NCBI GenBank assembly: GCA_002269645.1
Contig: NIVC01000197.1
Span: 372,001 to 436,000, forward strand
Direction of reading: 5' to 3'
Length of the DNA stretch: 64,000 nucleotides
Source: Macrostomum lignano
Taxonomy: Eukaryota
Every line of letters starts with the position of its first letter. The first letter of the stretch is position 1. The notes under the pieces are model-generated. The model did no database searches. It was not told where the DNA came from and worked only from the letters and a program-made list of their open reading frames with translations. Positions 21,256 through 48,000 of this stretch are shown piece after piece. Position numbers and translations under genes: made by a program.

Positions 21256-22006
<751 letters not shown>

Positions 22007-22030
22007 AAATTTCTTTTTCCATCCCTGCAG

Positions 22031-23461: not shown

Positions 23462-25093
23462 GTCTGCCAACCTATGTATGCGGAATCGAACTTATAGGGA
23501 CTCAAAAGTGAGAAAAGTTCAAATTTGAGATAAAAATTCCATTTAGAACTATACTTCACTCGAAGACAATGTGTTTTTTTATCGTATCCGATGTGTGCTG
23601 ATTTCTTATAATTTCTTGGTCGAGCGAACATGTCGCCCGGTTACCCAGTATTTTTCGTGTTTGGGCAGCTCGCATGTCCAGAAAGGCCAGCAGCCACCAG
23701 CAAAAATGTGCACCAGCGGTTTTCTAGGGTCACTGTGTAACTATTGCAAGCTTTGCGTCAGTCGCCAGTCTCCTAATCGCACTTTCTTAGTAGAAATAGA
23801 CACCAAGGCAGATTGAACGGCATACCAGCTACATGTTCTTATTGGTTAAAAGTGTAGAAATTCCTAGAAAAAACAGCCAATTTGAGCTAAGCATATCAAA
23901 AATAAAAGCAATGGATCATGATCTATTTTCAGGTATTGCATTAGATTGTAATTCGTGTATGCGAACTACGAGCGAGTACACCAAGAGAGACGTTTTCCTC
24001 GTTTAAAGCAATTTGTCACACCAAAGACGAATGAAGTTCATCTGTCTTTATAATATGCGCATCTGAATCAATTTCAACATTAGTGCATGCTTTACTGCTT
24101 ATTATATTAATTTCACGATGAAGCATACTTTATTAATGTGTAAACTAAGTAAAGCCATACAAACATGCTGTATGTAAAACACGCTGTCATTTTGTATTGT
24201 CACCTGCACTGCAGTACGACTTAAAAATGCGCGCTTGTTATATTGATTTTGTGCTTTACACACTGCAGATCTCTCTCTATATATACTGTCCTGTCATGTT
24301 GTTGACACATTCTCTGCATTATATATATATATATATATAATATAATTATATACCTATTGTCAACTTGTTGCGACATCTGCATACACCGCCATAAAATTGC
24401 CTGTTTTAAAAAAGGAAAATACTACAAATGATGAATTTGTTGCATCGATAATGCGTTCGGAGAACGCCGTTTGATCTCGTTTAATTCTTTGCTGCGATCA
24501 CTAGTAGTGACTCATGAAACCGGCAATCCTGGAAAATTACACTTGACAGGGTTGGAGAACTACACTAATTAGTGTCATCATTACATCGGCACGCAATCTA
24601 AAAAAACTTGTGGTGCGGCTGCCACCAGACCGCCACCAGACGGGACTACCCGTCTGTAACAGACGAAGTTTCTTGACCCTAACTGTATATTAGAAATGGA
24701 CGATTAAAGGACACTATGCGCAGGACTGTCTCGTGGTGCTCATCCTACGGGGACTTATTAAGAAGCATTGTTACTGCATTGTTACTGCACTCACTACTCA
24801 TCACATTTCATGCCACGTCTCTTAGTATAAATAAGCAAACAGACCGAAGCAAACGAGTTGAATTGCTAATGCCCTGAATTACTGGCCCTCCTTACCCGCT
24901 CGGTTATAACTAAAGTGGAATTAATAAGTTAGGATTGAGAAATTAGGAGATGACTAGCAATCTTCGCCCCCCGATGGGGGACATCTGGATAGAATCTCTG
25001 TTCTCTACAATTAACAAAAAGACAGCCAAAAAATCCTTCACAAAGACAACAGACAAACTGCTCAAATGAAGTGAATTGCAATAAGAAATCTTC

Positions 25094-25690
25094 CCAAGAC
25101 CACAAGCATCCCCCAGATAGCAAGCATCCTCCAGATAGCAAGCATTTTCCCAGATAGCAAGCATTTCCCAGATAGCAAGCATCCCCAAGATAGCAAGCAT
25201 CCTCCAGATAGCAAGCATCCCCCAGATAGCAAGCATCCCCAGATAGCAAGCATCCCCCAGATAGCAAACATCCCCCAGATAGCAAGCATTCCCCAGATAG
25301 CAAGCATTCCGCAGATAGCAAGCATCCCCAGATAGCAAGCATCCCCAAGATAGCAAGCATCCCTCAGATAGCAAGCATACCCCAAGATAGCAAGCATCCC
25401 TCAGATAGCAAGCATACCCCAGATAGCAAGCATCCCCCAGATAGCAAGCATCACTCAGATAGCAAGCATCCCTCAGATAGCAAGCATCCACCAGATAGCA
25501 AGCATCCCCCAGATAGCAAACATCCCCCAGATAGCAAGCATCCCCAGATAGCAAGCATTCCCAGATAGCAAGCATTCCCCAGATAGCAAGCATTCCCCAG
25601 AAAGCAAGCATCCTCCAAATAGCAAGCATCCTCCAAATAGCAAGCATCCCCAAGATAGATAGCATCCCCAAATAGCAACCATCCACCAGA
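25094..25690. repeat. 17-18-bp satellite CCCCCAGATAGCAAGCAT in H1 (also about 30640-31170, 37950-38085, 43605-44160)
   Basis: Directly visible; source of the GDACYL / MLAIWG pseudo-ORFs. Confidence 0.97.
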
Positions 25691-25789
25691 CAATAAGTAG
25701 CTAGAGCGACAATTTCCTTAGCTTTATAGTGGCTCCTTTAAATTGGCATGGCGCTTTATACCTTTACATTTGAAATTGGATATCTTGAA

Positions 25790-28700
25790 TGTTTGACATG
25801 GTGGCTCTTTTATGTTTGACATAGTGGCTCTTCTATGTTTGACATAGTGGCTCTTTTATGTTCGACATGGTGGCTCTTCTATGTTTGACATGGTGGCTTT
25901 TTTAGGTTTGACATGGTGGCTCTTTTATGTTTGACATGTTGACTTTTTTATGTTCGACACGGTGGCTTTTTAATGTTCGACATGGTGGCTCTTTTAGGTT
26001 TGAACCGGTGGCTCTTTAATGTTTGACATGGTGGCTCTTTAATGTTCGACATGGTGGCTCTTTTATGTTCGACATGGTGGCTCTTTAATGTTTGACATGG
26101 TGGCCCTTTAATGGTTAACATGGCGGCTCTTTAATTTTCGAAATGGTGGCTCCTTAATTTTCGAAATGGTGGCTGTTTTATGTTTGACATGGTGGCTCTT
26201 TAATGTTCGACATGGTGGCTCTTTAATGTTTGACATGGTGTCTGTTTTATGTTTGATATGGTGGCTCTTTAATGTTCGACATGGTGGCTCTTTAATGTTT
26301 GACATGGTAACTCTTTTATGTTTGATATGGTGGCTCCTTAATTTTCGAAATGGTGGCTGTTTTATATTTGACATGGTGGCTCTTTAATTTTTAACATGGT
26401 GGCTCTTTTAGGTTTGAAACGGTGACTCTTTAATGTTTGACATGGTGGCTTTTCTATGTTCGACATGGTGGCTCTTGTATGTTCGACATGGTGGCTTCTT
26501 TAGGTTTGAAATGGTGGCTCTTTAATATTTGACAAGGTGGCTCTTTAATGTTCGACATGGTGGCTCTTTAATGTTTGACATGTTGGCTTTTTAATGTTCG
26601 ACATGGTGGCTTTTTAATGTTCGACATGGTGGCTCCTTTAGGTTTGAAATGGTGGCTCTTTAATATTTGACAAGGTGGCTCTTTAATGTTCGACATGGTG
26701 GCTCTTTTAGGTTTGAACCGGTGGCTCTTTAATGTTTGACATGGTGTCTGTTTTATGTTTGACATGGTGGCTCTTTAATGTTCGACATGGTGGCTCTTTA
26801 ATGTTCGACATGGTGGCTCTTTAATTTTTAACATGGTGACTCTTTTATGTTCGACATGGTGGCTCCTTAAGGTTTGAAATATTGGCTCTTTAATGTTTAA
26901 CATGGTGGCTTTTCTATGTTCGACATGGTGGCTTTTCTATGTTCGACATGGTGGCTCTTGTATGTTCGACATGGTGGCTCTTTTAATGGTCGACATGGTG
27001 GCTCTTTAATGTTCTTCATGTTGGCTCTTTTATGTTTGACATGGTGGCTTTTTTATGTTTGACATGGTGGCTCTTTTATGTTCTACATAGCTGCTCTTTT
27101 ATGTTCGACATTGTGGCTCTTGTATGTTCGACAGGGTCGCTCTTTTAGGTTTGAAATGGTGGCTCTTTAATATTTGACAAGGTGGCCCTTTAATGTTTAA
27201 CATGGCGGCTCTTAAATTTTCGAAATGGTGGCTGTTTTATATTTGACATGGTGGCTCTTTAATGTTCGACATGGTGGCTCTTTAATGTTCTTAATGGTGT
27301 CTGTTTTATGTTTGACATGGTTGCTCTTTTATGTTCGACATGGTGGCTCTTTAATTTTTAACATGGTAACTCTTTTATGTTTGATATGGTGGCTCTTTTA
27401 TGTTCGACATGGTGGCTCTTGTATGTTCGACATGGTGGCTTCTTTAGGTTTGAAATGGTGGCTCTTTAATATTTGACAAGGTGGCTCTTTAATGTTCGAC
27501 ATGGTGGCTCTTTTAGGTTTGAAATGGTGGGTCTTTAATGCTTGACAATGTGGCTCTTTAATGTTTGACATGGTGGCTCTTTAATGTTCGACATGGTGGC
27601 TCTTTAATGTTTGACATGGTAACTCTTTTATGTTTGATATGGTGGCTCTTTTATGTTCGACATGGTGGCTCTTGTATGTTCGACATGGTGGCTTCTTTAG
27701 GTTTGAAATGGTGGCTCTTTAATATTTGACAAGGTGGCTCTTTAATGTTTGACATGGTGGCTCTTTAATGTTTGACATGGTGGCTCTTTTAGGTTTGAAA
27801 TGGTGGCTTTTTAATGTTTGACAATGTGGCTCTTTAATGTTTGACATGGTGGCTTTTTAATGTTCGACATGGTGGCTCTTTTAGGTTTGAACCGGTGGCT
27901 CTTTAATGTTTGACATGGTGGCTCTTTAATGTTTGACATGGTGTCTGTTTTATGTTTGACATGGTGGCTCTTTAATGTTCGACATGGTGGCTCTTTTAGG
28001 TTTTAACCGGTGGCTCTTTAATGTTTGACATGGTGGCTCTTTAATGTTTGAAATGGTGGCTCTTTAATGTTCGACATGGTGGCTCTTTAATTTTTAACAT
28101 GGTGACTCTTTTATGTTCGACATGGTGGCTCCTTTAGGTTTGAAATATTGGCTCTTTAATGTTTAACATGGTGGCTTTTCTATGTTCGACATGGTGGCTT
28201 TTCTATGTTCGACATGGTGGCTCTTTTATGTTCGACATGGTGGCTCTTTTATGTTCGACATGGTGGCTCTTTTATGTTCGACATGGTGGCTCTTGTATGT
28301 TCGACAGGGTCGCTCTTTTAGGTTTGAAATGGTGGCTCTTTAATATTTGACAAGGTGGCTCTTTAATGTTCGACATGGTGGCTCTTTAATGTTTGACATG
28401 GTGGCTCTTTTAGGTTTGACAAGGTGGCCCTTTAATGTTTAACATAGCGGCTCTTAAATTTTCGAAATGGTGGCTCCTTAATTTTCGAAATGGTGGCTGT
28501 TTTATATTTGACATGGTGGCTCTTTAATTTTTAACATGGTGGCTCTTTTAGGTTTGAAACGGTGGCTCTTTAATGTTTGACATGGTGACTCTTTAATGTT
28601 TGACATGGTGGCTTTTCTATGTTCGACATGGTGGCTCTTGTATGTTCGACATGGTGGCTTCTTTAGGTTTGAAATGGTGGCTCTTTAATATTTGACAAGG

Positions 28701-29900
28701 TGGCTCTTTAATGTTCGACATGGTGGCTCTTTAATGTTTGACATGGTGGCTCTTTTAGGTTTGAAATGGTGGGTCTTTAATGCTTGACAATGTGGCTCTT
28801 TAATGTTTGACATGGTGGCTCTTTAATGTTCGACATGGTGGCTCTTTAATGTTTGACATGGTAACTCTTTTATGTTTAATATGGTGGCTCTTTTATGTTC
28901 GACATGGTGGCTCTTTAATGTTTGACATGGTGGCTATTGAATGTTTGACATGGTAACTATTTTAGGTTTGAAATGGTGGGTCTTTAATGCTTGACAATGT
29001 GGCTCTTTAATGTTTGACATGGTAACTCTTTTATGTTTGATATGGTGGCTCTTTTATGTTCTTAATGGTGTCTGTTTTATGTTTGACATGGTGGCTCTTT
29101 AATTTTTAACATGGTGGCTCTTTTAGGTTTGAAACGGTGGCTCTTTAATGTTTGACATGGTGACTCTTTAATGTTTGACATGGTGGCTTTTCTATGTTCG
29201 ACATGGTGGCTCTTGTATGTTCGACATGGTGGCTTCTTTAGGTTTGAAATGGTGGCTCTTTAATATTTGACAAGGTGGCTCTTTAATGTTCGACATGGTG
29301 GCTCTTTAATGTTTGACATGGTGGCTCTTTTAGGTTTGAAATGGTGGGTCTTTAATGCTTGACAATGTGGCTCTTTAATGTTTGACATGGTGGCTCTTTA
29401 ATGTTCGACATGGTGGCTCTTTAATGTTTGACATGGTAACTCTTTTGTGTTTAATATGGTGGCTCTTTTATGTTCGACATGGTGGCTCTTTAATGTTTGA
29501 CATGGTGGCTATTGAATGTTTGACATGGTAACTATTTTAGGTTTGAAATGGTGGGTCTTTAATGCTTGACAATGTGGCTCTTTAATGTTTGACATGGTAA
29601 CTCTTTTATGTTTGATATGGTGGCTCTTTTATGTTCGACATGGTGGCTCTTTAATTTTCGACATGGTGGCTCCTTTAGGTTTGAAATGGTGGCTCTTTAA
29701 TGTTTGACATGGTGGCTCTTCTATGTTCGACATGGTGGCTCTTTAATGTTCGACATGGTGGCTCTTTAATTTTTAACATGGTAACTCGTTTATGTTCGAT
29801 ATGGTGGCTCTTTTATGTTCGACATGGTGGTTCTTTAATGTTCGACATGGTGGCTCCTTTAGGTTTGACATGGTGGCTCTTCTATTGCGCTTTTTTTATG
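25790..29900. repeat. 23-bp satellite ATGTTTGACATGGTGGCTCTTTA in H1
   Basis: Directly visible. Confidence 0.97.
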
Positions 29901-29934
29901 TTTAGCAGTTTTTTTGTTTTTAAGGTGTTTTAAT

Positions 29935-30015
29935 AAAAAAATTATTTTGCGCTTCTAAGACTCGAACCCAGGTCGCTACATTAGCATTCCAGTCTGTTCG
30001 CATCAGGGCTATCTC
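29935..30015 (-). promoter_or_regulatory. tRNA-like Pol III module in H1 (A-box-like, B box, T-run); homologues at 34342-34422, 37231-37310, 42903-42983, 47437-47517
   Basis: GATAGCCCTGATGCGAACAGACTGGAATGCTAATGTAGCGACCTGGGTTCGAGTCTTAG followed by a T run about 15 nt later. Confidence 0.6.
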
Positions 30016-30497
30016 TTTTCAATTGGAGAACATGAATTGTGGCCCTTATAATTCAATTCTTACAGCAAGTCAATTGGAGTAAAAAGTTATGACATAATCA
30101 ATTTCTCAGTCAGCCAGTATCAGTCTCACTTCGAGTTAGCAATATGGTTACGCAATTTCAATCAAGTCGTGTGTGCATTTCTTCGGCACTGTTTTCAACT
30201 TGTTGTGATGCAATCTTTATCAGAATTGAAATTCAGTCAGTCAGTTTTTCTCTAGCATTCTTACAATGCATTTCAAGTCGAAAATTTGGCTTGACCTTTG
30301 CAAAAAAGCGTGTTTTTCGAATATTTAATCCCTTTAACATTGAGCAATTTCTTAGCCAAGATGCATGTACTGTGCCAGGAAAATTTCTGATCGAATGATG
30401 CAAGTTTGAAGAAAATCGGTTGAGCCGTTTTTTCTGAAATCAATCGCATACCCATATACATACATACATACAGACAACTCATTTTTAGTATATAGGA

Positions 30498-33400
30498 CTA
30501 GCAATCTTCGCCCCCCGATGGGGGACATCTGGATAGAATCTCTGTTCTCTACAATTAACAAAAAGACAGCCAAAAAATCCTTCACAAAGACAACAGACAA
30601 ACTGCTCAAATGAAGTGAATTGCAATAAGAAATCTTCCCAAGACCACAAGCATCCCCCAGATAGCAAGCATCCTCCAGATAGCAAGCATTCTCCCAGATA
30701 GCAAGCATTTCCCAGATAGCAAGCATCCCCAAGATAGCAAGCATCCTCCAGATAGCAAGCATCCCCAGATAGCAAGCATCCCCCAGATAGCAAGCATCCC
30801 CCAGATAGCAAACATCCCCCAGATAGCAAGCATTCCCCAGATAGCAAGCATTCCGCAGATAGCAAGCATCCCCCAGATAGCAAGCATCCCCAAGATAGCA
30901 AGCATCCCTCAGATAGCAAGCATACCCCAAGATAGCAAGCATCCCTCAGATAGCAAGCATACCCCAGATAGCAAGCATCCCCCAGATAGCAAGCATCACT
31001 CAGATAGCAAGCATCCCTCAGATAGCAAGCATCCCCCAGATAGCAAGCATCCCCAGATAGCAAGCATTCCCCAGATAGCAAGCATTCCCCAGATAGCAAG
31101 CATCCCCCAGAAAGCAAGCATCCTCCAAATAGCAAGCATCCCCAAGATAGATAGCATCCCCAAATAGCAACCATCCACCAGACAATAAGTAGCTAGAGCG
31201 ACAATTTCCTTAGCTTTATAGTGGCTCCTTTAAATTGGCATGGCGCTTTATACCTTTACATTTGAAATTGGATATCTTGAATGTTTGACATGGTGGCTAT
31301 TTTATGTTTGACATAGTGGCTCTTCTATGTTTGACATGGTGGCTCTTTTATGTTTGACATAGTGGCTCTTTTATGTTCGACATAGTGGCTCTTCTATGTT
31401 TGACATGGTGGCTTTTTTAGGTTTGACATGGTGGCTCTTTTATGTTTGACATGTTGACTTTTTTATGTTCGACACGGTGGCTTTTAATGTTCGACATGGT
31501 GGCTCTTTTAGGTTTGAACCGGTGGCTCTTTAATGTTTGACATGGTGGCTCTTTAATGTTCGACATGGTGGCTCTTTTATGTTCGACATGGTGGCTCTTT
31601 AATGTTTGACATGGTGGCCCTTTAATGGTTAACATGGCGGCTCTTTAATTTTCGAAATGGTGGCTCCTTAATTTTCGAAATGGTGGCTGTTTTATGTTTG
31701 ACATGGTGGCTCTTTAATGTTCGACATGGTGGCTCTTTAATGTTTGACATGGTGGCCCTTTAATGGTTAACATGGCGGCTCTTTAATTTTCGAAATGGTG
31801 GCTCCTTAATTTTCGAAATGGTGGCTGTTTTATGTTTGACATGGTGGCTCTTTAATGTTCGACATGGTGGCTCTTTAATGTTTGACATGGTGTCGGTTTT
31901 ATGTTTGATATGGTGGCTCTTTAATGTTCGACATGGTGGCTCTTTAATGTTTGACATGGTAACTCTTTTATGTTTGATATGGTGGCTCTTTAATGTTCGA
32001 CATGGTGGCTCTTTAATGTTCGACATGGTGGCTCTTTAATGTTCGACATGGTGGCTCTTTAATTTTTAACATGGTGACTCTTTTATGTTCGACATGGTGG
32101 CTCTTTTATGTTTGACATAGTGGCTCTTCTATGTTTGACATGGTGGCTCTTTAATGTTTGACATGGTGGCTCTATTATGTTTGACATGGTGGTTCTTCTA
32201 TGTTTGACATGGTGGCTTTTTTAGGTTTGACATTATGGCTCTTTTATGTTTGACATATTGGCTTTTTAATGTTCGACATGGTGGCTTTTTAATGTTCGAC
32301 ATGGTGGCTCCTTTAGGTTTGAAATGGTGGCTCTTTAATATTTGACAAGGTGGCTCTTTAATGTTCGACATGGTGGCTCTTTTAGGTTTGAACCGGTGGC
32401 TCTTTAATGTTTGACATGGTGTCTGTTTTATGTTTGACATGGTTGCTCTTTTATGTTCGACATGGTGGCTCTTTAATTTTTAACATGGTAACTCTTTTAT
32501 GTTTGATATGGTGGCTCTTTTATGTTCGACATGGTGGCTCTTGTATGTTCGACATGGTGGCTTCTTTAGGTTTGAAATGGTGGCTCTTTAATATTTGACA
32601 AGGTGGCTCTTTAATGTTCGACATGGTGGCTCTTTTAGGTTTGAAATGGTGGGTCTTTAATGCTTGACAATGTGGCTCTTTAATGTTTGACATGGTGGCT
32701 CTTTAATGTTCGACATGGTGGCTCTTTAATGTTTGACATGGTAACTCTTTATGTTTGATATGGTGGCTCTTTTATGTTCGACATGGTGGCTCTTTAATGT
32801 TTGACATGGTGGCTCTTTAATGTTTGACATGGTAACTCTTTTATGTTTGATATGGTGGCTCTTTTATGTTCGACATGGTGGCTCTTGTATGTTCGACATG
32901 GTGGCTTCTTTAGGTTTGAAATGGTGGCTCTTTAATATTTGACAAGGTGGCTCTTTAATGTTTGACATGGTGGCTCTTTAATGTTTGACATGGTGGCTCT
33001 TTTAGGTTTGAAATGGTGGCTTTTTAATGTTTGACAATGTGGCTCTTTAATGTTTGACATGGTGGCTTTTTAATGTTCGACATGGTGGCTCTTTTAGGTT
33101 TGAACCGGTGGCTCTTTAATGTTTGACATGGTGGCTCTTTAATGTTTGACATGGTGTCTGTTTTATGTTTGACATGGTGGCTCTTTAATGTTCGACATGG
33201 TGGCTCTTTTAGGTTTGAACCGGTGGCTCTTTAATGTTTGACATGGTGGCTCTTTAATGTTTGAAATGGTGGCTCTTTAATGTTCGACATGGTGGCTCTT
33301 TAATTTTTAACATGGTGACTCTTTTATGTTCGACATGGTGGCTCCTTTAGGTTTGAAATATTGGCTCTTTAATGTTTAACATGGTGGCTTTTCTATGTTC

Positions 33401-34889: not shown

Positions 34890-35115
34890 CTAGCAATCTA
34901 CGCCCCCCGTTGGGGAGCCAAAGAAATGCAATACACGTTTTTTTAATAAACTACATGTATCCTTGAAATCTTAAAAAATCTCCTGTCAAACCTTGTAAGC
35001 CTTGACATGTCAGTAATTCCCCCCCCCCACAAGCTTTAACATATCAACTTCCCCCCTTGACATCTCAGCAATGCCCCAAATAAGCCTTGGAAATCTAAAA
35101 ATATCTGTCAACCTT

Positions 35116-37810: not shown

Positions 37811-40800
37811 AGCAATCTTCGCCCCCTTTGGGGACATCTGTATATAATCTCTGTTCTCTACAAGTAATAAGAAGATAGCCAAATAAAGCTTTCACAAAGA
37901 AAACAGACAAACTACTCAAATGAAGTGCAATGCAAAATAAAATCATCCCAAGACAGCAAGCATCCCCCAGATAGCAAGCATCCCCCAGATAGCAAGCATC
38001 CCCCAGATAGCAAGCATCCCCCAGATAGCAAGCATCCCAGATAGCAAGCATCCCCCAGATAGATAGCATCCCCAAATAGTAAGCATCCACCAGACAATAA
38101 GTAGCTAGTGCGACAATTTCCTTAACATTATAGTGGCTCCTTTAAAATTCGCTCACTTTTACGTTTGAAATTGTGTATCTTTTATGTTTGACATGGTGGC
38201 TCTTTTATGTTTGAAATGAAGTCACTTATATGTTTGACATGGTGAATCTTTTAAATGTTTTACAGGTTGGCTCTTTAATTTTCAACATGGTGGCTCTTTT
38301 ATGTTCGACATAGTGGCTCCTTTATGTTCGACATGGTGGCTCTTTTATATTAGACATGGTGGCTCTTTTATGTTCTACATGGTGGTTCTTTTATGTTCGA
38401 CATGGTGGCTCTTTAATATTCAACAAAGTGGCTTTTTAATGTTTGACATAATGACTCTTTACTGTTCAAAATGGTGGCTCCTTAATGTTTGACATGGTGG
38501 CTCTTAAATGTTCGCCATGGTGGCTCTGTTATGTTTGACATGGTGGCTCTTTAATGTTTTACATGGTGGCTCTTATGTTTGCCATGGTGGCTCTTTTATG
38601 ATTGACATGGTGGCTCTTTAATGTTTGACATGGAGTCACGTATATGTTCGATATGGAGTCATGTATATGTTTGACATGGAGTCACGTATATGTTTGACAT
38701 GGTGGCTCCTTTATGTTTGACATGGTGGCTCTTTACTGTTTGACATAGCGGCTCTTTAATATTCAACAAAGTGGCTCTTAATGTTCGACATGGTGGCTCT
38801 TAATGTTTACATAGTGGCACTTTAATATTCAACAAAGTGGCTCTTTAATGTTTGACATGGTGACTCTTTAATTTTCAAAATGGTGGCTCTTTAATGTTTG
38901 ACATAGTGGCCTTTAATGTTCAACATAGTGGCTCTTTAATGTTCGACACGATGGCACTTTAATGTTCGACATGGTGGCTCTTTTATATTAGACATGGTGC
39001 TCTTTTAATGTTCGACATGGTTGCTCTTTAATGTTTGACATGGTAGCTCGTTAATGTTCGACACGATGGCACTTTAATGATTGACATGGTGGTTCTTAAT
39101 GTTCGACATGGTGGCTCTTTAATGTTCGAAATGTTTTTTTTTGTTTTACAGTGCTCTTTAATGTTCAACATAGTGGCTCTTTTTTGTTTGAAATAAAGTC
39201 TCTTTATACGTTTGACATGGTGGCTCTTTAATGTTCGGCATGATGGCTCTTTAATGTTCGACATGAAGTCACGTATATGTTTGATATAGAGTCACATATA
39301 CGTTTTTCATAGTGGCTCTTTAATGTTTGACATGGTGGCTCTTTAATGTTCGACATGGTGGCTCCTTTATGTTCGACATGGTGGCTCTTTAATGTTTGAC
39401 ATGGTGACTCTTTTATGTTTGACATGGTGGCTCTAATGTTTGACATGGTGGCTCTTTTATGTTTGACATGGTGGCTCTTTAATTTTTGACATTGTGGCTC
39501 TTTAATGTTCGACATGGTAGCTCCTTAATGTTTGACATGGTGGCTCTTTAATGTTGGACATGATGGCTCTTTAATGTTCGACATGGAGTCACATATATGT
39601 TCGACATGATGGCTCTATAATGTTCGACATGGAGTCACATATATGTTCGACATGATGGCTCTTTAATGTTCGATATGGAGTCACATATATGTTCGACATG
39701 ATGGCTCTTTAATATTCGAAATAGTGGCTCTTTTATGTTTGACATGGTGGCTCTTTTATGTTTGACATGGAGTCACGTATATGTTTGACATGGTGGCTCT
39801 TTAATGTTTGACAAAACAAAACAAAATAAAACTATTTTATGTTTGACATGGTGGCTCAATAATGTTTGACATGGTGGCTCAATAATGTTTGACATGGTGG
39901 ATCTTTTATGTTTGACATGGTGGTTCTTTAATGTTTGAAATGGAGTCACGTATATGCTTTACATGGTGGCTCTTTTATATGTTTAACATGGTGGCTCTTT
40001 AATGTTTGACATGGTGGCTCTTTAATGTTTGACATGGTGGCTCTTTAATGTTTTAAATGGAGTCACGTATATGTTTGTCATGGAGTCACGTATATTTTTT
40101 ACATGGTGGCTCTTAAATGTTTGACATGGTGGCTCTTCAATGTTCTTCATGGTGGCTCTTCAATGTTCTTCATGGTGGCTCTTTTATGTTTGACATGGTG
40201 GCTCTTTAATGTTTGACATGGAGTCACGTACATGTCTGACATGGTGGCTCTTTTATGTTTGACATGGAGTCACGTATATGTTTGACATGTTGGCTCTTTA
40301 ATGTTCGACATGGAGTCACGTATATGCTTTACATGGTGGCTCTTTTATTTTTGACATGGTGGCTCTTTAATGTTCAACATGGTGGCTCTTTTATGTTTGA
40401 CATGGTGGCTCTTTTATGTTTGACATGGAGTCACGTATATGTTTTACATGGTGGCGCTTTTATGTTTGACATAGTGGCTTTTTTACGTTTGACATGGTCG
40501 CTCTTTAATGTTTGACATAGTGGCTCTTTAATGTTCAACATAGTGGCTCTTTAATGTTCGACACGATGGCACTTTAATGTTCGACATGGTGGCTCTTTTA
40601 TATTAGACATGGTGGCTCTTTTATGTTCGACATGGTGGCTCTTTAATGTTTGACATGGTAGCTCGTTAATGTTCGACACGATGGCACTTTAATGATTGAC
40701 ATGGTGGTTCTTTAATGTTCGACATGGTGGCTCTTTAATGTTCGAAATGTTTTTTTTGTTTTACAGTGGCTCTTTAATGTTCAACATAGTGGCTCTTTTT

Positions 40801-43464
40801 TGTTTGAAATAAAGTCTCTTATACGTTTGACATGGTGGCTCTTTAATGTTCGGCATGATGGCTCTTTAATGTTCGACATGAAGTCACGTATATGTTTGAT
40901 ATAGAGTCACATATACGTTTTTCATAGTGGCTCTTTAATGTTTGACATGGTGGCTCTTTAATGTTCGACATGGTGGCTCCTTTATGTTCGACATGGTGGC
41001 TCTTTAATGTTTGACATGGTGGCTCTTTACTGTTTGACATGGTGGCTCTTTTCTGTTTGACATGATGGTTCTTTTATGTTTGAAATGGTAACTCTTTAAT
41101 GTTTGATATAGTGGCTCTTTTATGTTCGACATGGTGGCTCTTTTATGTTTGAAATGGTAGCTCTTTAATGTTTGATATAGTGGCTCTTTAATGTTCTACA
41201 TGGAGTCGCGTATATGCTCGACATGGTGGCTCTTTAATGTTTGACATGGTGACTCTTTTATGTTTGACATGGTGGCTCTAATGTTTGACATGGTGGCTCT
41301 TTTATGTTTGACATGGTGGCTCTTTAATTTTTGACATTGTGGCTCTTTAATGTTCGACATGGTAGCTCCATAATGTTTGACATGGTGGCTCTTTAATGTT
41401 GGACATGATGGCTCTTTAATGTTCGACATGGAGTCACATATATGTTCGACATGATGGCTCTATAATGTTCGACATGGAGTCACATATATGTTCGACATGA
41501 TGGCTCTTTAATGTTCGACATGGAGTCACATATATGTTCGACATGATGGCTCTTTAATATTCGAAATAGTGGCTCTTTTATGTTTGACATGGTGGCTCTT
41601 TTATGTTTGACATGGAGTCACGTATATGTTTGACATGGTGGCTCTTTAATGTTTGACAAAACAAAACAAAATAAAACTATTTTATGTTTGACATGGTGGC
41701 TCAATAATGTTTGACATGGTGGCTCAATAATGTTTGACATGGTGGATCTTTTATGTTTGACATGGTGGTTCTTTAATGTTTGAAATGGAGTCACGTATAT
41801 GCTTTACATGGTGGCTCTTTTATATGTTTAACATGGTGGCTCTTTAATGTTTGACATGGTGGCTCTTTAATGTTTGACATGGTGGCTCTTTTATGTTTGA
41901 CATGGAGTCACGTATATGTTTGACATGGTGGCTCTTTAATGTTTGACAAAACAAAACAAAATAAAACTATTTTATGTTTGACATGGTGGCTCAATAATGT
42001 TTGACATGGTGGCTCAATAATGTTTGACATGGTGGATCTTTTATGTTTGACATGGTGGTTCTTTAATGTTTTAAATGGAGTCACGTATATGTTTGTCATG
42101 GAGTCACGTATATTTTTTACATGGTGGCTCTTAAATGTTTGACATGGTGGCTCTTCAATGTTCTTCATGGTGGCTCTTTTATGTTTGACATGGTGGCTCT
42201 TTAATGTTTGACATGGAGTCACGTACATGTCTGACATGGTGGCTCTTTTATGTTTGACATGGAGTCACGTATATGTTTGACATGTTGGCTCTTTAATGTT
42301 CGACATGGAGTCACGTATATGCTTTACATGGTGGCTCTTTTATTTTTGACATGGTGGCTCTTTAATGTTCAACATGGTGGCTCTTTTATGTTTGACATGG
42401 TGGCTCTTTTATGTTTGACATGGAGTCACGTATATGTTTTACATGGTGGCGCTTTTATGTTTGACATAGTGGCTTTTTTACGTTTGACATGGTCGCTCTT
42501 TAATGTTCTACATGGTGGCTCTTTTATTTTTGTCATGGTAGCTCTTTAATGTTCGACATGGTGTCTCTTCAATATTTGACATGGATTCATGTATATGTTT
42601 GACATGGCTCTTTAATGTTCGACATCCAGTCACGTATATGTTTTACATGGTGGTTCTTTTATGTTTGACATGGTTGCCCTTTAATGTTCGACATGGTGTC
42701 TCTTTAATATTTGACATGGAGTCACGTACATGTTTGACATTGTGGGTCTTTTATGCTTGATATGGTGGCTCTTTAATGTTTTACATGGTAGCTCTTTTAT
42801 TTTTAATATGGTGGCTCTTTTATGTTCAATATGGTGGCTCTGTAATGTTCGACATGGTGGCTCTTTTATGTTTAGCATTTTGTGTTTTTAAGGTGTTTTA
42901 ATAAAAAAATTATTTTGCACTACTAAGATTCGAACCCAGGTCGCTACATTAGCAGTCCAGTCTGTTCGCATCTAGACTATCTCTTTTCAATTGGAGAACA
43001 TGAATTTTGGCCCTTATAATTCAATACTTACAGCAAGTCGTTTAGTGTAAAAAGGTGTATGACATAATCAATTTCTCAGTCAGCCAGTATCCGTCTCAAT
43101 TGAAGTTAGCAATATAATTACGCAATTTTAATCAAGTCTTGTGCGCATTTCTTCGACACTGTTTTCAACTTGTTGTGATGTAATATTTATCAGAATCGAA
43201 ATTCAGTCAGTCAGTTTTTTCTCTAGCATTTTTACAATGCAATTCAAGTCGAAAATTTGGCTTGACCTTTGCAAAAAAGCATGTTTTTCGAATATTTAAT
43301 CCCTTTAAAATTGAGCAATTTCTTAGCCAAGATGCATGTACCGTCCCAGGAAAATTTCTGATCGAATGGTGCAAGTTTGAAGAAAATCGGTTGAGCCATT
43401 TTTTCTGAAATCTATCGCATACCTACCCACATACATACAGACAACTCATTTTTAGTATATTGGA
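37811..43464 (-). mobile_element. Non-autonomous Helitron H4 (terminal CTAG eroded)
   Basis: Begins AGCAATCTTCGCCCCCTTTGGGG; ends TTTTTAGTATATTGGA; 18-bp and 23-bp arrays. Confidence 0.82.
38180..42870. repeat. 23-bp satellite array in H4 (private variant CATGGAGTCACGTATATG)
   Basis: Directly visible. Confidence 0.97.
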
Positions 43465-46400
43465 CTAGCAATCTTCGCCCCCCGTTGGGGGACATCTGTA
43501 TAGAACCTCTGTTCTCTACAAGTAACAAAAAGATAGCCAAAAAAAGCCTTCGCAAAGAAAACAGACAAAATACTCAAAGGAAGTGCAATGCAAAAAGAAA
43601 TCATTCCAAGATAGCAAGCATCCCCCAGATAGCAAGCATCCCCCAGATAGCAAGCATCCCCCAGATAGCAAGCATCCCCCAGATAGCAAGCATCCTCCAG
43701 ATTGCAAGCAACCCCGGATAGCAAGCATCCCCCAGATAGCAAGCATCCCTCAGATAGCAAGCATCCCCCAGATAGCAAGCATCCCCAAGATAGCAAGCAT
43801 CCCCAAGATAGCAAGCATCCCCCAGATAGCAAGCATCCCCCAGATAGCAAGCATCCTCCAGATTGCAAGCAACCCCCGGATAGCAAGCATCCCCAGATAG
43901 CAAGCATCCCCAGATAGCAAGCATCCCCTAGATAGCAACCATCCCCCAGATAGCAAGCATCCCCCAGATAGCAAGCATCCCTCAGATAGCAAGCATCCCC
44001 CAGATAGCAAGCATCCCCCAGATAACAAGCATCCCCCAGATAGCAAGCATCCCCAGATAGCAAGCATCCCCCAGATAGCAAGTATCCCCAAGATAGCAAG
44101 CATCCCCCAGATAGCAAGCATCCCCTACATAGATAGCATCCCCAAATAGCAAGCATCCACCAGACAATAAGTAGCTAGTGCGATAATTTCCTTAGCATTA
44201 TAGTGGCTCCTTTAAAATTCGCTTACTTTTACGTTTGAAATTGTGTAAATTTTATGTTTGACATGGTGGCTCTTTATGTTCTACATGGCAACTCTTTTAT
44301 GTTTGAAACGATGGCTTTTTAATGTCTGACATGGTGGCTCTTTTATGTTTGACACAGTGGCCCTTTAATGTTCGACAAAGTGGCTATTTAATGTTTGACA
44401 AGGTGGCTTTTAAATGTTTGACATGGTGGCTCCTTAATGTTCGAAATGGTGGCTCTTTAATGTATGACATAAAGACACATATATAATTGACATGGTGGCT
44501 CTTAAATGTTTGACATGGTGGCTCTTTATTGTTTGACATAGTGGCTCTTTAATGATCGACAAAGTGGCTCTTTAATGTTCTTCATGGTATAGCTCTTTTA
44601 TGTTCGACATGGTGGCTCTTAAATGTTTGACATGGTGGCTCTTTAATGTTAGAAATGGTGGCTCTTTTGTTTGACATGGTGGCTCTTTAATATTCTACAT
44701 TGTGGCTCTTAAGTGTTCGAAATGGTGGATCTTTTAGGTTTGACATGATGGCTGTTTAATGTTTGACATGGTAGCTCTTTTATGTTGACATGGTAGCTCT
44801 TTTAGGTTTGACATGGTGGCTGTTTAATGTTTGACATGGTAGCTCTTTTATGTTGACATGGTAGCTCTTTTAGGTTTGACATGGTGGCTGTTTAATGTTC
44901 AACATAGTGGCTCTTTAATATTCTACATGGTGGCTCTTTTATTTTTAACATGGTGGCTCTTTTGTTTTACATGGTGGCTCTTTAATGTTTGACATAAAGT
45001 CACTTATATGTTCGAAATGGTGGCTCTTTAATATTTTACATTGTGGCTCTTAAGTGTTCGACATGGTGGCTCTTTTAGGTTTGACATGGTGGCTCTTTTA
45101 TATTCTACATTTTGGCTCTTAAATTTTCGACATGGTGGCTCTTTTTGGTTTGACATGGTGGCTCTTTTATGCTTGATATGGTGGCTCTCTAATGTTTAAC
45201 ATGGTGACTTTTAATGTTAGACATGGTGGCTCTTTAATGTTCGACATGGTGGCTCTTTGATATTCGACAGGGTGGCTCTTAAATGTTTGATATGGTGGCT
45301 CTTTATGTTTGACATGTTGGCTCTTTTGTGTTTGACATGGTGGCTCTTTCATGTTTGACATGGTGGCTCTTTTTGTTGAAATGGTGGCTCTTTTTTGTTC
45401 TACATGGTAACTCTTTTATATCTGATACGGTGGCTTTTTTAATGTCTGACATGTTGGCTCTTTTATGTTTGACATAGTGGCTCTTTAATGTTCAAAATGG
45501 TGGCTCTTTTATGTTTGACATGGTGGCTCTTTAATGATTGACATGGTGGCTCTTTAATGTTCGACATGGTGGCTCTTCTATGTTCGAAATGGTGGCTTTT
45601 TAATGTTCAAAATAGTGGCTCTTTTATGTTCGACATGGTGGCTCTTTAATGTTCGAAATGGTGGCTCTTTAATGTACGACATAATGGCTCTTTAATGTTT
45701 GAAAATGTGGCTTTTGAATGTTTGACATGTTGGCTCTTTAATGTTTGACATGGTAGCTCTGTTATGTTCGACATGGTGGCTCTTTAATATTCCTCATGTT
45801 ATAGCTCTTTCATGTTTGACATGGTGGCTCTTTAATGTTCGAAATAGTGGCTCTTTAATGTTCGAAATGGTGGCTCTTTAATGTTTGACACAAAGTCACA
45901 TTTATGTTTGACATGGTGGCTCCTAAATGTTTGACATGTTGGCTCTTTTATGTTTGACATGTTGGCTCATTTATGTTTGACATAGTGGCTCTTTGATGTT
46001 CGAAATAGTGGCTCTTTTATGGTCGACATGGTGGCTCTTTAATGTTCGAAATGGTGGCTCTTTAATGTTCGAAATAGTGGCTCTTTTATGTTCGACATGG
46101 TGGCTCTTTAATGTTCGAAATGGTGGCTGTTTAATGTTCGAAATGGTGGCTCTTTTATGTTTGACATAAAGTCACTTATATGTTTTACATGGTGCCTCTT
46201 AAATATTAGACATGGTGGCTCGTTTAGGTTTGACATGGTGGCTCTTTTATGTTTGACATGTTGGCTCTTTAATGTTCGACATGGTGGCTCTTCTATATTC
46301 GAAATGGTGGCTTTTTAATGTTCAAAATAGTGGCTTTTTTATGTTCGACATGGTGGCTCTTTAATGTTCGAAATGGTGGCTCTTTAATGTACGACATAAT

Positions 46401-48000
46401 GGCTCTTTAATGTTTGACAATGTGGCTTTTGAATGTTTGACATGGTGGCTCTTTAATGTTTGACATGGTAGCTCTGTTATGTTCGACATGGTGGCTCTTT
46501 AATGTTCGAAATAGTGGCTCTTTAATGTTCGAAATGGTGGCTCTTTAATGTTTGACACAAAGTCACATTTATGTTTGACATGGTGGCTCCTAAATGTTTG
46601 ACATGTTGGCTCATTTATGTTTGACATAGTGGCTCTTTGATGTTCGAAATAGTGGCTCTTTTATGGTCGACATGGTGGCTCTTTAATGTTCGAAATGGTG
46701 GCTCTTTAATGTTCGAAATAGTGGCTCTTTTATGTTCGACATGGTGGCTCTTTAATGTTCGAAATGGTGGCTCTTTAATGTTCGAAATAGTGGCTCTTTA
46801 ATGTTCGACATGGTGGCTCTTCTATGTTCGAAATGGTGGCTTTTTAATGTTCAAAATAGTGGCTCTTTTATGTTCGACATGGTGGCTCTTTAATGTTCGA
46901 AATGGTGGCTCTTTAATGTACGACATAATGGCTCTTTAATGTTTGACAATGTGGCTTTTGAATGTTTGACATGGTGGCTCTTTAATGTTTGACATGGTGG
47001 CTCTTTAATGTTTGACATGGTAGCTCTGTTATGTTCGACATGGTGGCTCTTTAATGTTCGAAATAGTGGCTCTTTAATGTTCGAAATGGTGGCTCTTTAA
47101 TGTTTGACACAAAGTCACATTTATGTTTGACATGTTGGCTCTTTTATGTTTGACATAGTGGCTCTTTGATGTTCGAAATAGTGGCTCTTTTATGGTCGAC
47201 ATGGTGGCTCTTTAATGTTCGACATGGTGGCTCTTTAATGTTCGAAATGGTGGCTGTTTAATGTTCGAAATGGTGGCTCTTTTATGTTGACATAAAGTCA
47301 CTTATATGTTTTACATGGTGCCTCTTAAATATTAGACATGGTGGCTCGTTTAGGTTTGACATGGTGGCTCTTATATGTTTGACATTGCGCTTCTTTGATG
47401 TTTAGCAGTTTTGTTGTGTTTTTAAGGTGTTTTAATAAAAAAATCTTTTTGCACTACTATGATTCGAACCCAGGTCGCTACATTAGCATTCCAGTCTGTT
47501 CGCATCAGGGCTATCTCTTTTCAATTGGAGAACATGAATTGTGGCCCTTATAATTCAATTCTTACAGCAAGTCAATTGGAGTAAAAAGTTATGACATAAT
47601 CAATTTCTCAGTCAGCCAGTATCAGTCTCAATTTAAGTTAGCAATATGGTTACGCAATTTAAATCAAGTCGTGTGTGCATTTCTTCGGTACTGTTTTCAA
47701 CTTGTTGTGATGCAATCTTTATCACAATCGGAATTCAGTCAGTCAGTTTTTTCTCTAGCATTCTTACAATGCATTTCAGGTCGAAAGAGCTGCTTGACCT
47801 TTGCAAAAAAGCATGTTTTTCGAATATTTAATCCCTTTAAAATTGAGCAATTTCTTAGCCAAGATGCATGTACCGTCCCAGGAAAATTTCTGATCGAATG
47901 GTGCAAGTTTGAAGAAAATCGGTTGAGCCATTTTTTCTGAAATCTATCGCATACCTACCTACCTACCTACCCACAGACAACTCATTTTTAGTATATAGGA
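43465..48000 (-). mobile_element. Non-autonomous Helitron H5
   Basis: GA|CTAG junction with H4 at 43464/43465; ends TTTTTAGTATATAGGA at 48000. Confidence 0.85.
44250..47390. repeat. 23-bp satellite array in H5 (enriched variant TTCGAAAT(G/A)GTGG)
   Basis: Directly visible. Confidence 0.97.

What the first reader, a model, noticed from the sequence alone, without database searches (positions are those of the whole stretch)
24954..48000. The 23-kb satellite block is a head-to-tail chain of five divergent Helitrons acting as satellite carriers
Seen: five units on the minus strand start TCC(T/A)ATATACTAAAAATG and end in a conserved CCCC-N3-GGGG stem (loop varies: GAT/GTT/TTT on +) about 13-15 nt before CTAG. 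H1/H2 (30497|30498) and H4/H5 (43464|43465) are fused CTAG-to-TC with no host base between them. About 0.15-0.25 kb at one end and about 0.6 kb at the other are conserved, while the interior is 1-5 kb of satellite. Established: TC...CTRR ends, a 3' hairpin and A|T targets define Helitrons, and rolling-circle replication can produce head-to-tail arrays. Inference: H1 and H2 are very similar but H3, H4 and H5 differ, so this is not one replication burst. It is either repeated insertion at Helitron ends or an old concatemer whose units homogenised separately, giving a three-level hierarchy (monomer, element, chain). No RepHel ORF is present.
Basis: partly seen in the sequence, partly recalled or inferred. 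Interest (0 to 1): 0.9.

Follow-up and report, generated by a model that had tools for sequence, protein, structure and literature searches.

The report
Stacked satellite-carrying Helitrons in a flatworm
The 23-kb block is a real head-to-tail stack of five non-coding rolling-circle transposons (Helitrons) of the flatworm Macrostomum lignano, each carrying its own minisatellite arrays; both features are already known for Helitrons, but here the stacking is very common genome-wide and seems to arise because insertion sites look like the element's own starting end.

Summary
Window 24954-48000 (minus strand) holds five non-autonomous Helitrons joined end to end with no host DNA between them. Each has a TC... 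5' end, a GC hairpin 12 nt before a ...CTAG 3' end, an 18-bp array and a 23-bp array.

Corrections:
- H3 is not a fifth link. It is nested at an A|T 16 nt inside H2's 5' end.
- H4 lacks the final AG.
- The chain's own 5' flank is T, not A. Two paralogous empty sites show a CA|TC target, no duplication, and 2 nt lost.

The genome is M. lignano Mlig_3_7. Genome-wide:
- There are about 2,400 such 5' ends; 22-35% abut another copy's CTAG.
- The 3' flank is T in 60/60 sampled ends. The 5' flank is A in about 65% of solo copies.
- 37% of 3' ends are followed by T-N5-7-CTAA (about 2% expected), which mimics the element's own 5' end.

A 9.1-kb autonomous partner (Rep + Pif1 helicase, no endonuclease) has the same termini and both satellites.

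The chain is not one replication burst: the units differ in age and subfamily. Repeated insertion at element ends fits best.

Satellite-carrying Helitrons and tandem Helitrons are already known, so this is a new member of a known kind. The end-mimicking target motif is the interesting extra.

The parts
24954..30497 (-). H1, a non-autonomous Helitron of 5,544 bp. On the + strand it reads: 3' terminal module with hairpin (24954-25102), 18-bp array (25103-25690), spacer, 23-bp array (25783-29880), 5' module of about 600 bp ending in the 5' end TCCTATATAC (29881-30497).
   Evidence: The 3' flank is T followed by CTAA at +8. About 20 other genomic copies differ from its 5' module by a single indel.
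30498..34889 (-). H2, main body (4,392 bp). It is 99.8% identical to H1 in both terminal modules, but its arrays are rearranged and about 1.1 kb shorter. Its 5' end is cut after nt 16 by H3.
37795..37810 (-). The displaced first 16 nt of H2's 5' terminus (TCTAATATACTAAAAA), left upstream of H3 by the nested insertion.
   Evidence: The same structure (first 16 nt of a 5' end followed by a full 5' end) occurs 13 times in the genome.
34890..37794 (-). H3, a 2,905-bp Helitron of a divergent subfamily, nested at A|T between nt 16 and 17 of H2. It has a different 3' module containing a (CCCTAA)n run (35116-35177), a diverged 23-bp satellite (36015-37185), and a 5' module 76% identical to the others.
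   Evidence: At least 12 perfect copies of its 5' module exist elsewhere, so it is young.
37811..43464 (-). H4, 5,654 bp. Its 3' end is ...GATTGCT, lacking AG. It has an 18-bp array (37947-38094), a 23-bp array (38156-42873) and a 5' module ending TCCAATATAC. It is the oldest unit.
   Evidence: The best non-self match of its 5' module is 97%, then 93%.
43465..48000 (-). H5, 4,536 bp. It has an 18-bp array (43609-44164), a 23-bp array (44250-47403) and a 5' module (47404-48000). It is the 5'-most unit and abuts host DNA.
   Evidence: At least 7 perfect copies of its 5' module lie on other contigs with different flanks.
24804..24953 (.). Host flank on the 3' side of the chain. It is itself part of a dispersed repeat.
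   Evidence: The joined flanks match two empty sites at 97% over 300 nt and about 35 further copies at 72-81%.
48001..48150 (.). Host flank on the 5' side of the chain.
   Evidence: The empty site has 2 extra nt (TG on the + strand, CA on the element strand) at the junction.

Best explanation
The block consists of five non-autonomous canonical Helitrons of Macrostomum lignano. They are deletion derivatives of a 9.1-kb autonomous Helitron family that already carries an 18-bp and a 23-bp minisatellite near its 3' end.

All five occupy one single point of the host sequence. The stack was built by several separate insertion events, not by one rolling-circle concatemer.

Proposed mechanism (inferred):
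- The transposase picks target sites that look like the core of its own left end, 5'-A|T-N5-7-CTAA, compared with the left end T-N8-CTAAAAA.
- This recognition motif lies wholly 3' of the cut and nothing is duplicated or destroyed. Each insertion therefore leaves the old target intact behind its 3' end and adds a perfect new target, its own 5' end.
- Re-insertion at the same spot, or 16 nt inside a left end as H3 did, gives exact CTAG|TC head-to-tail fusions between unrelated subfamilies.

The arrays travel with the elements. They then change in length and order much faster than the unique ends, by slippage or unequal exchange.
For: Shown:
1. Helitron hallmarks and genome-wide flanks. There are 2,392 exact 5' ends and 2,106 exact 3' ends of one type. 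The 3' flank is T in 60/60 sampled ends, and the 5' flank is A in 24/36 distinct solo flanks.
2. An empty site exists for the entire chain, with an A|T target and no duplication.
3. An autonomous partner lies at G000:C40:95636-104728. It has the same 5' end, its first 311 bp are 91-96% identical to the window units, and it has the same hairpin and GATTGCTAG 3' end. It contains both satellites and Helitron_like_N + PIF1 exons, but no endonuclease.
4. The chain is not one burst. The 5' modules range from 76% to 99.8% identity. By best non-self matches, H4 is old (97%), while H3 and H5 have perfect copies elsewhere.
5. H3 splits H2's 5' end at an A|T, leaving 16 nt upstream. This structure recurs 13 times in the genome.
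6. Fusion is a family trait. There are 530 exact GATTGCTAG|TCCWATATACTAAAAATG junctions. In the sample, 28/80 5' ends are fused to a CTAG of at least 5 different 3'-end types, in mixed pairings.
7. Target motif. 29/39 solo 3' flanks have CTA at +7 to +9, versus 7-8/39 in control windows (p = 3e-6). Genome-wide, 781/2,106 3' ends are followed by T-N5-7-CTAA, against about 2% expected from base composition. The chain's own 3' flank has the motif.
8. Arrays are carried. Eight copies, with 7 distinct flanks, share a colinear 1.5-kb array.

Inferred: that resemblance to the left end is what drives targeting.
Against: - The age order along the chain is not monotonic: the oldest unit, H4, sits in the middle. 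A simple 'always add upstream' rule therefore fails, and insertion must also occur at internal junctions or behind a resident 3' end.
- The motif offset in host targets (CTAA at +7 to +9) is 1-3 nt shorter than in the element's 5' end (+10).
- H1 and H2 are 99.8% alike. They could equally be a local duplication or a dimer from one template.
- Some of the 530 junctions may be copies of pre-formed dimers transposed as a unit, or redundant haplotigs. The assembly has 180-312 Mb of redundancy (PMC5730564).
- No reads were available to validate this particular 23-kb assembly.
- No biochemical data exist for this transposase.
Confidence: 0.7

Rival explanations
1. An old rolling-circle concatemer. 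One replication or transposition event that bypassed the 3' terminator laid down five identical units, which later diverged and homogenised their arrays separately.
For: Tandem Helitron arrays are usually read this way (PMC5876387; 10.1101/2021.06.02.446622). The junctions are exact CTAG|TC. H1 and H2 are 99.8% identical.
Against: - H3 differs by 24% in the 5' module and about 50% in the 3' module, and it physically splits H2's terminus.
- H3 and H5 have perfect copies on other contigs, whereas H4's best relative is 97%. The units therefore entered at different times and from different masters.
- Genome-wide, junctions pair different 3'-end and 5'-end subfamilies.
Confidence: 0.07
2. Local duplication or unequal crossing-over. 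One or two insertions were multiplied in place by recombination between the shared arrays or modules, and gene conversion accounts for the H1/H2 similarity.
For: H1 and H2 share 81% of their monomer types and have 99.8% identical ends, but their arrays are rearranged. Nearby segmental duplicates of elements together with their flanks exist elsewhere, e.g. identical flanks 9.5 kb apart on C19 and 3.8 kb apart on C23.
Against: This cannot create units of different subfamilies (H3, H4, H5) or the split terminus. It also does not explain the target motif or the mixed junctions genome-wide.
Confidence: 0.15
3. The units are Helentron-derived elements (HINE / DINE-1-like), as in the oyster Cg_HINE satellite carriers, rather than canonical Helitrons.
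For: A tetranucleotide microsatellite, (GTAT)n or (GGTA)n, sits right after the 5' end and is followed by central tandem repeats, as in HINEs (PMC7492417, PMC4067079). The chain's own flanks read T|T.
Against: - There are no subterminal inverted repeats.
- The 3' end is CTAG with a hairpin 12 nt upstream.
- Genome-wide the target is A|T, and the empty site shows A|T.
- The partner RepHel has no endonuclease domain after the helicase.
Confidence: 0.04
4. Assembly artefact. The chain, or part of it such as the H1/H2 repeat, was produced by mis-joining repetitive long reads.
For: Mlig_3_7 is a Canu assembly of early PacBio data, with only 64% error-free bases by REAPR and much redundancy (PMC5730564). 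H1 and H2 are near-identical neighbours.
Against: The same exact junction occurs 530 times on hundreds of contigs. Units differ in array content, so they are not a collapsed or expanded single copy. The split-terminus structure is internally consistent.
Confidence: 0.05

Closest known systems
[quoted passage not shown]
   Same: It is a canonical Helitron with TC...CTAG ends and a hairpin about 13 bp from the 3' end. It has no coding capacity, and its interior is made of two distinct blocks of tandem repeats that vary in length between copies. Its termini are shared with protein-coding relatives.
   Different: Mothra's repeats are longer units in shorter blocks. No frequent head-to-tail stacking and no extended target motif were reported. 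The host is a plant. Here the autonomous partner itself carries both arrays.
Cg_HINE satellite carriers of the Pacific oyster (PMC7492417) and DINE-1/HINE (PMC4067079)
   Same: These are non-autonomous rolling-circle elements with a 5' microsatellite and central satellite-like arrays, sometimes two arrays in series. They are dispersed genome-wide and create no target duplication.
   Different: They are Helentrons: they have subterminal inverted repeats, a TT target and endonuclease-bearing partners. The monomers are 140-180 bp in arrays of only about 2-5 copies. Here there are no subTIRs, the target is A|T, the 3' end is CTAG, the monomers are 18 and 23 bp in arrays of up to about 200 copies, and the partner has no endonuclease.
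Tandem or abutting Helitrons in Myotis (Pritham & Feschotte 2007, as cited in PMC5876387 and PMC4778049) and Helitron-1_DPe arrays on the D. pseudoobscura Y (10.1101/2021.06.02.446622)
   Same: Exact 3'-end-to-5'-end junctions occur with no host DNA between. [quoted passage not shown]
   Different: Those arrays are mostly copies of one element and are attributed to rolling-circle read-through. Here about a quarter to a third of all ends are fused, partners are often of different subfamilies and ages, and a specific 3'-side motif (T-N5-7-CTAA) that mimics the left end accompanies solo insertions.
IS608/IS200-IS605 and IS91 (bacterial HUH transposons; cited in PMC5876387)
   Same: These are single-strand HUH transposition systems without target duplication. 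The target sequence is the same short sequence that the enzyme recognises next to a transposon end ('transposon-directed target site selection').
   Different: They are prokaryotic, have a tetranucleotide target on the other side of the end, and have no helicase fusion (IS608). This is an analogy of mechanism only and was not tested here.

Membership tests
Canonical Helitron (Helitron1-type rolling-circle transposon) | 5' terminus TC and 3' terminus CTRR | tested here: met
   The 5' end is TCC(T/A)ATATAC and the 3' end is ...GATTGCTAG in H1, H2, H3 and H5. H4 lacks the last AG. The genome holds 2,392 such 5' ends and 2,106 such 3' ends.
Canonical Helitron (Helitron1-type rolling-circle transposon) | Short GC-rich hairpin about 10-15 nt upstream of the 3' end | tested here: met
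   A 5-7 bp stem, (GT)CCCCC-N3-4-GGGGG(GC), ends 12 nt before the terminus. Predicted folding energy is -12 to -16 kcal/mol.
Canonical Helitron (Helitron1-type rolling-circle transposon) | Insertion between A and T without target-site duplication | tested here: met
   The 3' flank is T in 60/60 sampled ends. The 5' flank is A in 24/36 distinct solo flanks. The empty site of this chain reads CA|TC with no duplication, and the occupied site lacks 2 nt.
Canonical Helitron (Helitron1-type rolling-circle transposon) | No terminal inverted repeats | tested here: met
   No inverted match of at least 8 nt was found between the first 60 nt and the last 120 nt.
Canonical Helitron (Helitron1-type rolling-circle transposon) | An autonomous relative encoding Rep (HUH) + Pif1-like helicase and sharing the termini | tested here: met
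   L178 (C40), 9,093 bp, has the same 5' end, 311 bp of shared 5' sequence, the same 3' module, and Helitron_like_N (E = 4e-46) plus PIF1 exons. Whether the protein is active was not tested.
Helentron / HINE (DINE-1-like) | Subterminal inverted repeats of 11-15 bp at both ends | tested here: not met
   none found.
Helentron / HINE (DINE-1-like) | Insertion into TT or T-rich sequence | tested here: not met
   The 5' flank is A in about 65% of solo copies and T in only about 15%.
Helentron / HINE (DINE-1-like) | Partner transposase with a C-terminal AP-endonuclease domain | tested here: not met
   No endonuclease domain was found in or after the helicase exons of either RepHel lineage examined.
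Helentron / HINE (DINE-1-like) | 5' microsatellite followed by central tandem repeats and a 3' palindrome | tested here: met
   (GTAT)n or (GGTA)n follows nt 27, then the arrays and the 3' hairpin. This architecture is shared with HINEs but is not exclusive to them.
Rolling-circle concatemer (single-event tandem array) | Neighbouring units derive from one template: same subfamily and same age | tested here: not met
   Identity between units ranges from 76% to 99.8%. The units have different best relatives and ages. Only H1/H2 would qualify.
Classical satellite DNA | Long homogeneous arrays independent of mobile elements, often heterochromatic | tested here: inconclusive
   There are 35,237 exact 23-bp cores, an estimated 2.8 Mb. 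On the one contig inspected (C1), four of the five array blocks lie next to listed element ends, and the small block near 1.258 Mb has none. Long free-standing arrays were not searched for, and chromosomal location is not testable here.

The most novel reading that the evidence does not exclude
This Helitron lineage practises self-mimicking target choice. Its RepHel cuts host DNA at pseudo-left-ends (A|T-N5-7-CTAA) and, best of all, at the genuine left ends of resident copies. Insertions therefore regenerate and multiply their own targets, and they build mixed head-to-tail stacks automatically. That would be a transposase-encoded route from dispersed minisatellite carriers to a higher-order, satellite-like array (monomer, element, chain). 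It would also be the first extended sequence-specific target rule described for a eukaryotic rolling-circle transposon.
Probability: 0.4. Interest if true: 0.65.

Novelty: new member of a known kind. Interest (0 to 1): 0.45.

Why it matters
The finding gives a curated, apparently young Helitron family for the flatworm model M. lignano: an autonomous element, non-autonomous derivatives, termini and a target rule. In that genome 'simple and tandem repeats' make up 15% of the assembly and hamper assembly work, yet I found no description of Helitrons in the papers I could search.

It shows that part of that tandem-repeat load, about 2.8 Mb for the 23-bp repeat alone, is delivered by transposition.

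If the end-mimicking target motif holds up, it offers a testable explanation of why Helitrons pile up head to tail, without invoking concatemer replication. It would also make a convenient system for studying how transposon-borne minisatellites grow into higher-order arrays.

Tried and rejected
- ARAGORN and Rfam found no tRNA or RNA family in the tRNA-like stretch of the 5' modules or anywhere in the window.
I fell back on 60-80-nt flanks, so full-length neighbours could not be aged genome-wide.
- The simple prediction 'each new copy inserts upstream, so units get younger towards the 5' end' was tested with best-hit identities and failed: H4, in the middle, is the oldest.
- Helentron/HINE classification was considered because of the 5' microsatellite and the T|T flanks of this chain. 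It was rejected on subTIRs, target and partner protein.
- BLAST of H1 against H2 across the arrays was uninformative and was replaced by k-mer diagonals.
- A first candidate partner, C4120, turned out to be a second Helitron lineage with a related 5' end but a different, non-CTRR 3' end.
- Pfam scans of large window ORFs served only to identify the host.
Full report
**What is in the window**

The interval 24954-48000 stands out as a lower-GC block (33-42%), strand-skewed through the 23-bp arrays, made mostly of two short tandem repeats. One has an 18-bp unit (CAAGCATCCCCCAGATAG on the + strand) and the other a 23-bp unit (TCTTTAATGTTTGACATGGTGGC).

The reverse complement of TCC(T/A)ATATACTAAAAATG ends at 30497, 37794, 43464 and 48000. 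A 2-mismatch copy ends at 37810. Only 0.02 matches are expected by chance.

On the + strand, each unit starts with CTAG + 9 nt + CCCCC(C)-N3-4-GGGG(G). Read on the minus strand, every unit has the following layout:
- 5' TCC(T/A)ATATACTAAAAATGAGTTGTCTG.
- A tetranucleotide microsatellite.
- A unique 5' module of about 600 bp.
- A 23-bp array of 1.2-4.7 kb.
- A spacer of about 90 bp.
- An 18-bp array of 0.15-0.6 kb.
- A 3' module of about 150 bp, with a hairpin 12 nt before ...GATTGCTAG-3'.

Identities between units:

| Comparison | 5' module | 3' module |
|---|---|---|
| H1 vs H2 | 99.8% | 99.5% |
| Among H1, H4, H5 | about 92% | 88-92% |
| H3 vs the others | 76% | about 50% |

The junctions 30497|30498 and 43464|43465 are exact CTAG|TCC fusions.

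**Corrections to the anatomy**

H2 lacks its first 16 nt at 34889|34890. Exactly 16 nt of a 5' end (TCTAATATACTAAAAA) lie at 37795-37810, immediately upstream of H3's 5' end.

The structure on the element strand is therefore: H4 ...GATTGCT + H2(1-16) + [H3: TCC...CTAG] + H2(17-end). H3 is a nested insertion at the A|T between nt 16 and 17 of H2's left end. It is not a serial link of a concatemer. H4's 3' end lacks the final AG.

The outer flanks of the chain on the element strand read ...GGCT|TCC ... CTAG|TCATCTCCTAAT.

**The chain is one insertion point**

I joined 150 nt of each flank and searched the genome. Two loci (C3698:54084-54389 and C606:415388-415693) match the whole 300 nt at 97%. 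About 35 further loci match at 72-81%, so the host sequence is itself an older dispersed repeat.

On the element strand the empty sites read ...GGCTCA|TCATC.... The occupied site reads ...GGCT[chain]TCATC.... This shows three things:
- The 3' boundary is exact.
- The target was an A|T and there is no target-site duplication.
- Two nt (CA) are missing at the 5' junction, or were gained in the paralogues.

This explains why the chain's own 5' flank is T rather than A.

**Which organism**

A single-exon p62/sequestosome-like ORF at 58531-59697(-) is 87% identical to a Macrostomum lignano protein.

The assembly has 764.4 Mb in 5,269 contigs, with a longest contig of 2,680,987 bp. These figures match Mlig_3_7 (PMC5730564). 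That paper reports:
- 15% simple and tandem repeats.
- 180-312 Mb of redundant sequence.
- Only 64% error-free bases by REAPR.

Copy counts below are therefore inflated by redundancy, but ratios are not affected.

**Family-wide behaviour**

The exact 5' end occurs 2,392 times. The exact 3' end GGGGCGWAGATTGCTAG occurs 2,106 times. The exact fusion GATTGCTAG|TCCWATATACTAAAAATG occurs 530 times, which is 22% of 5' ends.

I sampled the first 80 5' ends in contig order:
- 28 are fused exactly to a ...CTAG belonging to at least five different 3'-end types.
- 4 are within a few nt of a 3' end.
- 3 follow partial 5'-end duplications.
- 45 are solo.

Pairings of 3'-end type with 5'-end type are mixed. 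For example, an H1-type 3' end is fused to an H3-type 5' end, and the reverse also occurs.

Solo 5' flanks end in A in 24 of 36 distinct cases.

Of 60 sampled 3' ends, all 60 are followed by T. Eleven are fused to a full 5' end, and seven more to variant or partial 5' ends.

These are the canonical Helitron rules (TC...CTRR, hairpin, A|T, no duplication; PMC4067079, PMC4778049). There are no subterminal inverted repeats.

**The autonomous partner**

Helitron_like_N (PF14214) hits at least 150 places in the genome, several of them within 3-10 kb of copies of this family and in the same orientation.

At C40:95636-104728 (locus L178) lies a 9,093-bp element with these features:
- The same left end, with its first 311 bp 91-96% identical to H1, H2, H4 and H5 (87% to H3).
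- A multi-exon RepHel: an exon bearing an OTU-protease-like motif (Pfam did not confirm it), Helitron_like_N at E = 4e-46, PIF1, and the Pif1 2B and C-terminal helicase domains.
- No endonuclease.
- A 0.44-kb 23-bp array, a 0.17-kb 18-bp array, the same 3' module, the hairpin, and GATTGCTAG.

This element is itself fused head to tail on both sides. The window units are thus deletion derivatives in which the arrays have expanded up to tenfold. The window itself has no RepHel sequence.

A second RepHel lineage at C4120 has a related left end, TCTCTATACTAAAGTTGACG + (GTCT)n. Its 3' end is different and non-CTRR: hairpin CTCCTCCGAAGGAGGAG + TTCCAC. It too is fused behind a 3.0-kb copy of the first family.

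**Are the satellites carried?**

Yes. Among 28 dispersed copies whose 5' module is 98-100% identical to H5, eight (seven distinct flanks) share a colinear 1.5-kb array that is at least 97% identical on the main diagonal. Four others share a second version.

H5's own array is not colinear with these. H1 and H2 have 99.8% identical ends but differ by many array indels.

Arrays are therefore copied by transposition and then restructured much faster than unique sequence changes. Further details:
- Monomer repertoires are unit-specific. H1/H2 share 81% of monomer types, and other pairs share about 20%.
- H3's 23-bp monomer matches the others at 13-14 of 23 positions with the same period, which suggests it is a diverged homologue.
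- The 23-bp core occurs 35,237 times, about 2.8 Mb by extrapolation.
- On contig C1, four of the five blocks of it lie next to listed element ends. The small block near 1.258 Mb has none listed.

**How the chain formed**

A single rolling-circle concatemer is excluded for the chain as a whole, for three reasons.
- The units belong to different subfamilies.
- H3 physically interrupts H2.
- The age proxies differ, as tabulated below.

| Unit | Best matches of the 601-bp 5' module on other contigs |
|---|---|
| H5 | at least 7 perfect |
| H3 | at least 12 perfect |
| H1 | about 20 copies differing by one indel |
| H4 | 97%, then 93% |

Random insertion cannot explain fusions at a quarter to a third of all ends.

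Solo insertions reveal a strong signal on the 3' side:
- CTA starts at +7 to +9 in 29/39 distinct flanks, versus 7-8/39 in control windows (Fisher p = 3e-6).
- Genome-wide, 781 of 2,106 3' ends (37%) are followed by T-N5-7-CTAA with otherwise unrelated spacers. About 2% is expected from base composition.

The element's own left end is T-N8-CTAAAAA, and variant left ends in the genome have N5-N8. The chain's own 3' flank also carries the motif (TCATCTCCTAA).

My reading is inferred, not shown. The transposase recognises the same short feature when it nicks a left end and when it nicks a target. Because this feature lies entirely 3' of the nick and nothing is duplicated, an insertion leaves the target usable and adds a perfect new one. 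That invites further insertions at the same point. The internal A|T at nt 16/17 of the left end is a secondary hotspot, used 13 times genome-wide.

The non-monotonic age order, with old H4 between young units, means that insertions also occur at internal junctions. This is expected if the -1 base matters little; it is A in only about 65% of solo copies.

H1/H2 may instead be a local duplication or a dimer.

**Comparison with what is known**

- Non-autonomous canonical Helitrons built from two tandem-repeat blocks are known (Mothra, PMC4683698).
- Helentron-derived satellite carriers are known (Cg_HINE, PMC7492417; DINE-1/HINE, PMC4067079).
- Paramecium Helitrons have a left end-satellite-right end layout (PMC13085455).
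- Head-to-tail Helitron junctions and arrays are cited as support for rolling-circle transposition (PMC5876387) and were quantified on a Drosophila Y chromosome (10.1101/2021.06.02.446622).
- The Helraiser study lists abutting 5'/3' insertions in bats and an AT-rich preference strongest on the 3' side (PMC4778049).
- I found no description of Helitrons in M. lignano in the searchable literature.

The finding is therefore a new member of a known kind. Three things go beyond the literature I could read:
- The frequency and mixed composition of the fusions.
- The nested insertion into a left end.
- The specific end-mimicking target motif.

These observations are solid as counts, but their mechanistic reading is untested.

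**Caveats**

- No reads were available to verify this locus.
- Flank samples are small (36-39 distinct flanks) and come from the first contigs in listing order.
- Redundant haplotigs inflate absolute counts.
- Some T-N5-7-CTAA flanks are degraded or variant left ends rather than naive host DNA. For example, TCCATATACTAA recurs.
- The activity of the RepHel is unknown.

Noticed in passing
window 34890-36010 (H3 3' region), including 35116-35177: H3's 3' part consists of about three degenerate repeats of about 450 bp, each beginning with a hairpin-like C-run/G-run segment resembling the 3' terminus. One contains about 10 telomere-type repeats (CCCTAA on the + strand, TTAGGG on the element strand). 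These may be relics of older truncated 3' ends or of multiple terminators.
   Followed up: partly
window 29940-30010, 34350-34420, 37250-37300, 42910-42980, 47450-47520: Each non-autonomous 5' module contains a tRNA-like stretch on the element strand (...GCGACCTGGGTTCGAGTCTTAG...). This part of the module (nt about 310-600) is absent from the autonomous element. ARAGORN and Rfam do not call it.
   Followed up: partly
23-bp and 18-bp arrays throughout 25103-47403: On the element strand every 23-bp monomer contains GCCACCATG (a perfect Kozak-type context), and every 18-bp monomer contains a G5 tract (CTATCTGGGGGATGCTTG). I saw no evidence of function. This may be coincidence.
   Followed up: no
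L176/L177 (G000:C4120:1-17500, reverse strand 3081-16335): A second Helitron lineage of about 13 kb has Rep + Pif1 exons. Its left end is TCTCTATACTAAAGTTGACG + (GTCT)n. Its right end is the hairpin CTCCTCCGAAGGAGGAG followed by TTCCAC, with no CTRR. It is also found fused head to tail with itself and with the first family.
   Followed up: partly
L001 / L176 (G000:C4120, around 14420-17520): A 3.0-kb copy of the window's family is flanked on both sides by the same approximately 65 nt of the second lineage's left end (TCTCTATACTAAAG...CATTTCGACAA). This looks like either a chimeric element that acquired a foreign left end or a 3' transduction re-inserted by homology.
   Followed up: no
window 24804-24953 and 48001-48150: The host sequence interrupted by the chain is itself a dispersed repeat, with at least 35 copies at 72-81% identity over the joined flanks. 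Its class is unidentified.
   Followed up: no
L035, L072, L103 (G000:C1:781193, C13:325406, C28:253435): In three separate places a copy is inserted at the same A|T inside an H3-type 5' module (...GCGTAACCATA|TCC...). This is either a second internal hotspot or a composite that has itself been copied.
   Followed up: no
window 51020-51140 and 52623-52708: Two short arrays of a 15-bp unit lie in inverted orientation (TCAAAAGGGCGACAG and ACTGTCGCCCTTTTG) about 1.5 kb apart in AT-rich DNA. They may be the subterminal repeats of a small DNA transposon.
   Followed up: no
window 993-2812, 4015-4620, 5471-5928, 7282-8920, 9581-10634, 20019-20295, 21257-22007, 60924-61262, 61687-61987, 62811-63204: The rest of the window is packed with at least ten unrelated mini- and microsatellite arrays (units of 3-95 bp). 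This is in line with the 15% tandem-repeat content reported for this genome. Whether any of them are also transposon-borne was not checked.
   Followed up: no
window 58531-59697 (-), 20373-21266 (+), 55864-56853 (+): Host genes flank the block. They are a single-exon p62/sequestosome-like ORF (PB1 + ZZ + UBA), an ORF with a LIM-interaction domain (LDB-like), and an ORF with a WH2 motif. Coding parts are 50-56% GC, against 28-40% in the surrounding DNA.
   Followed up: partly
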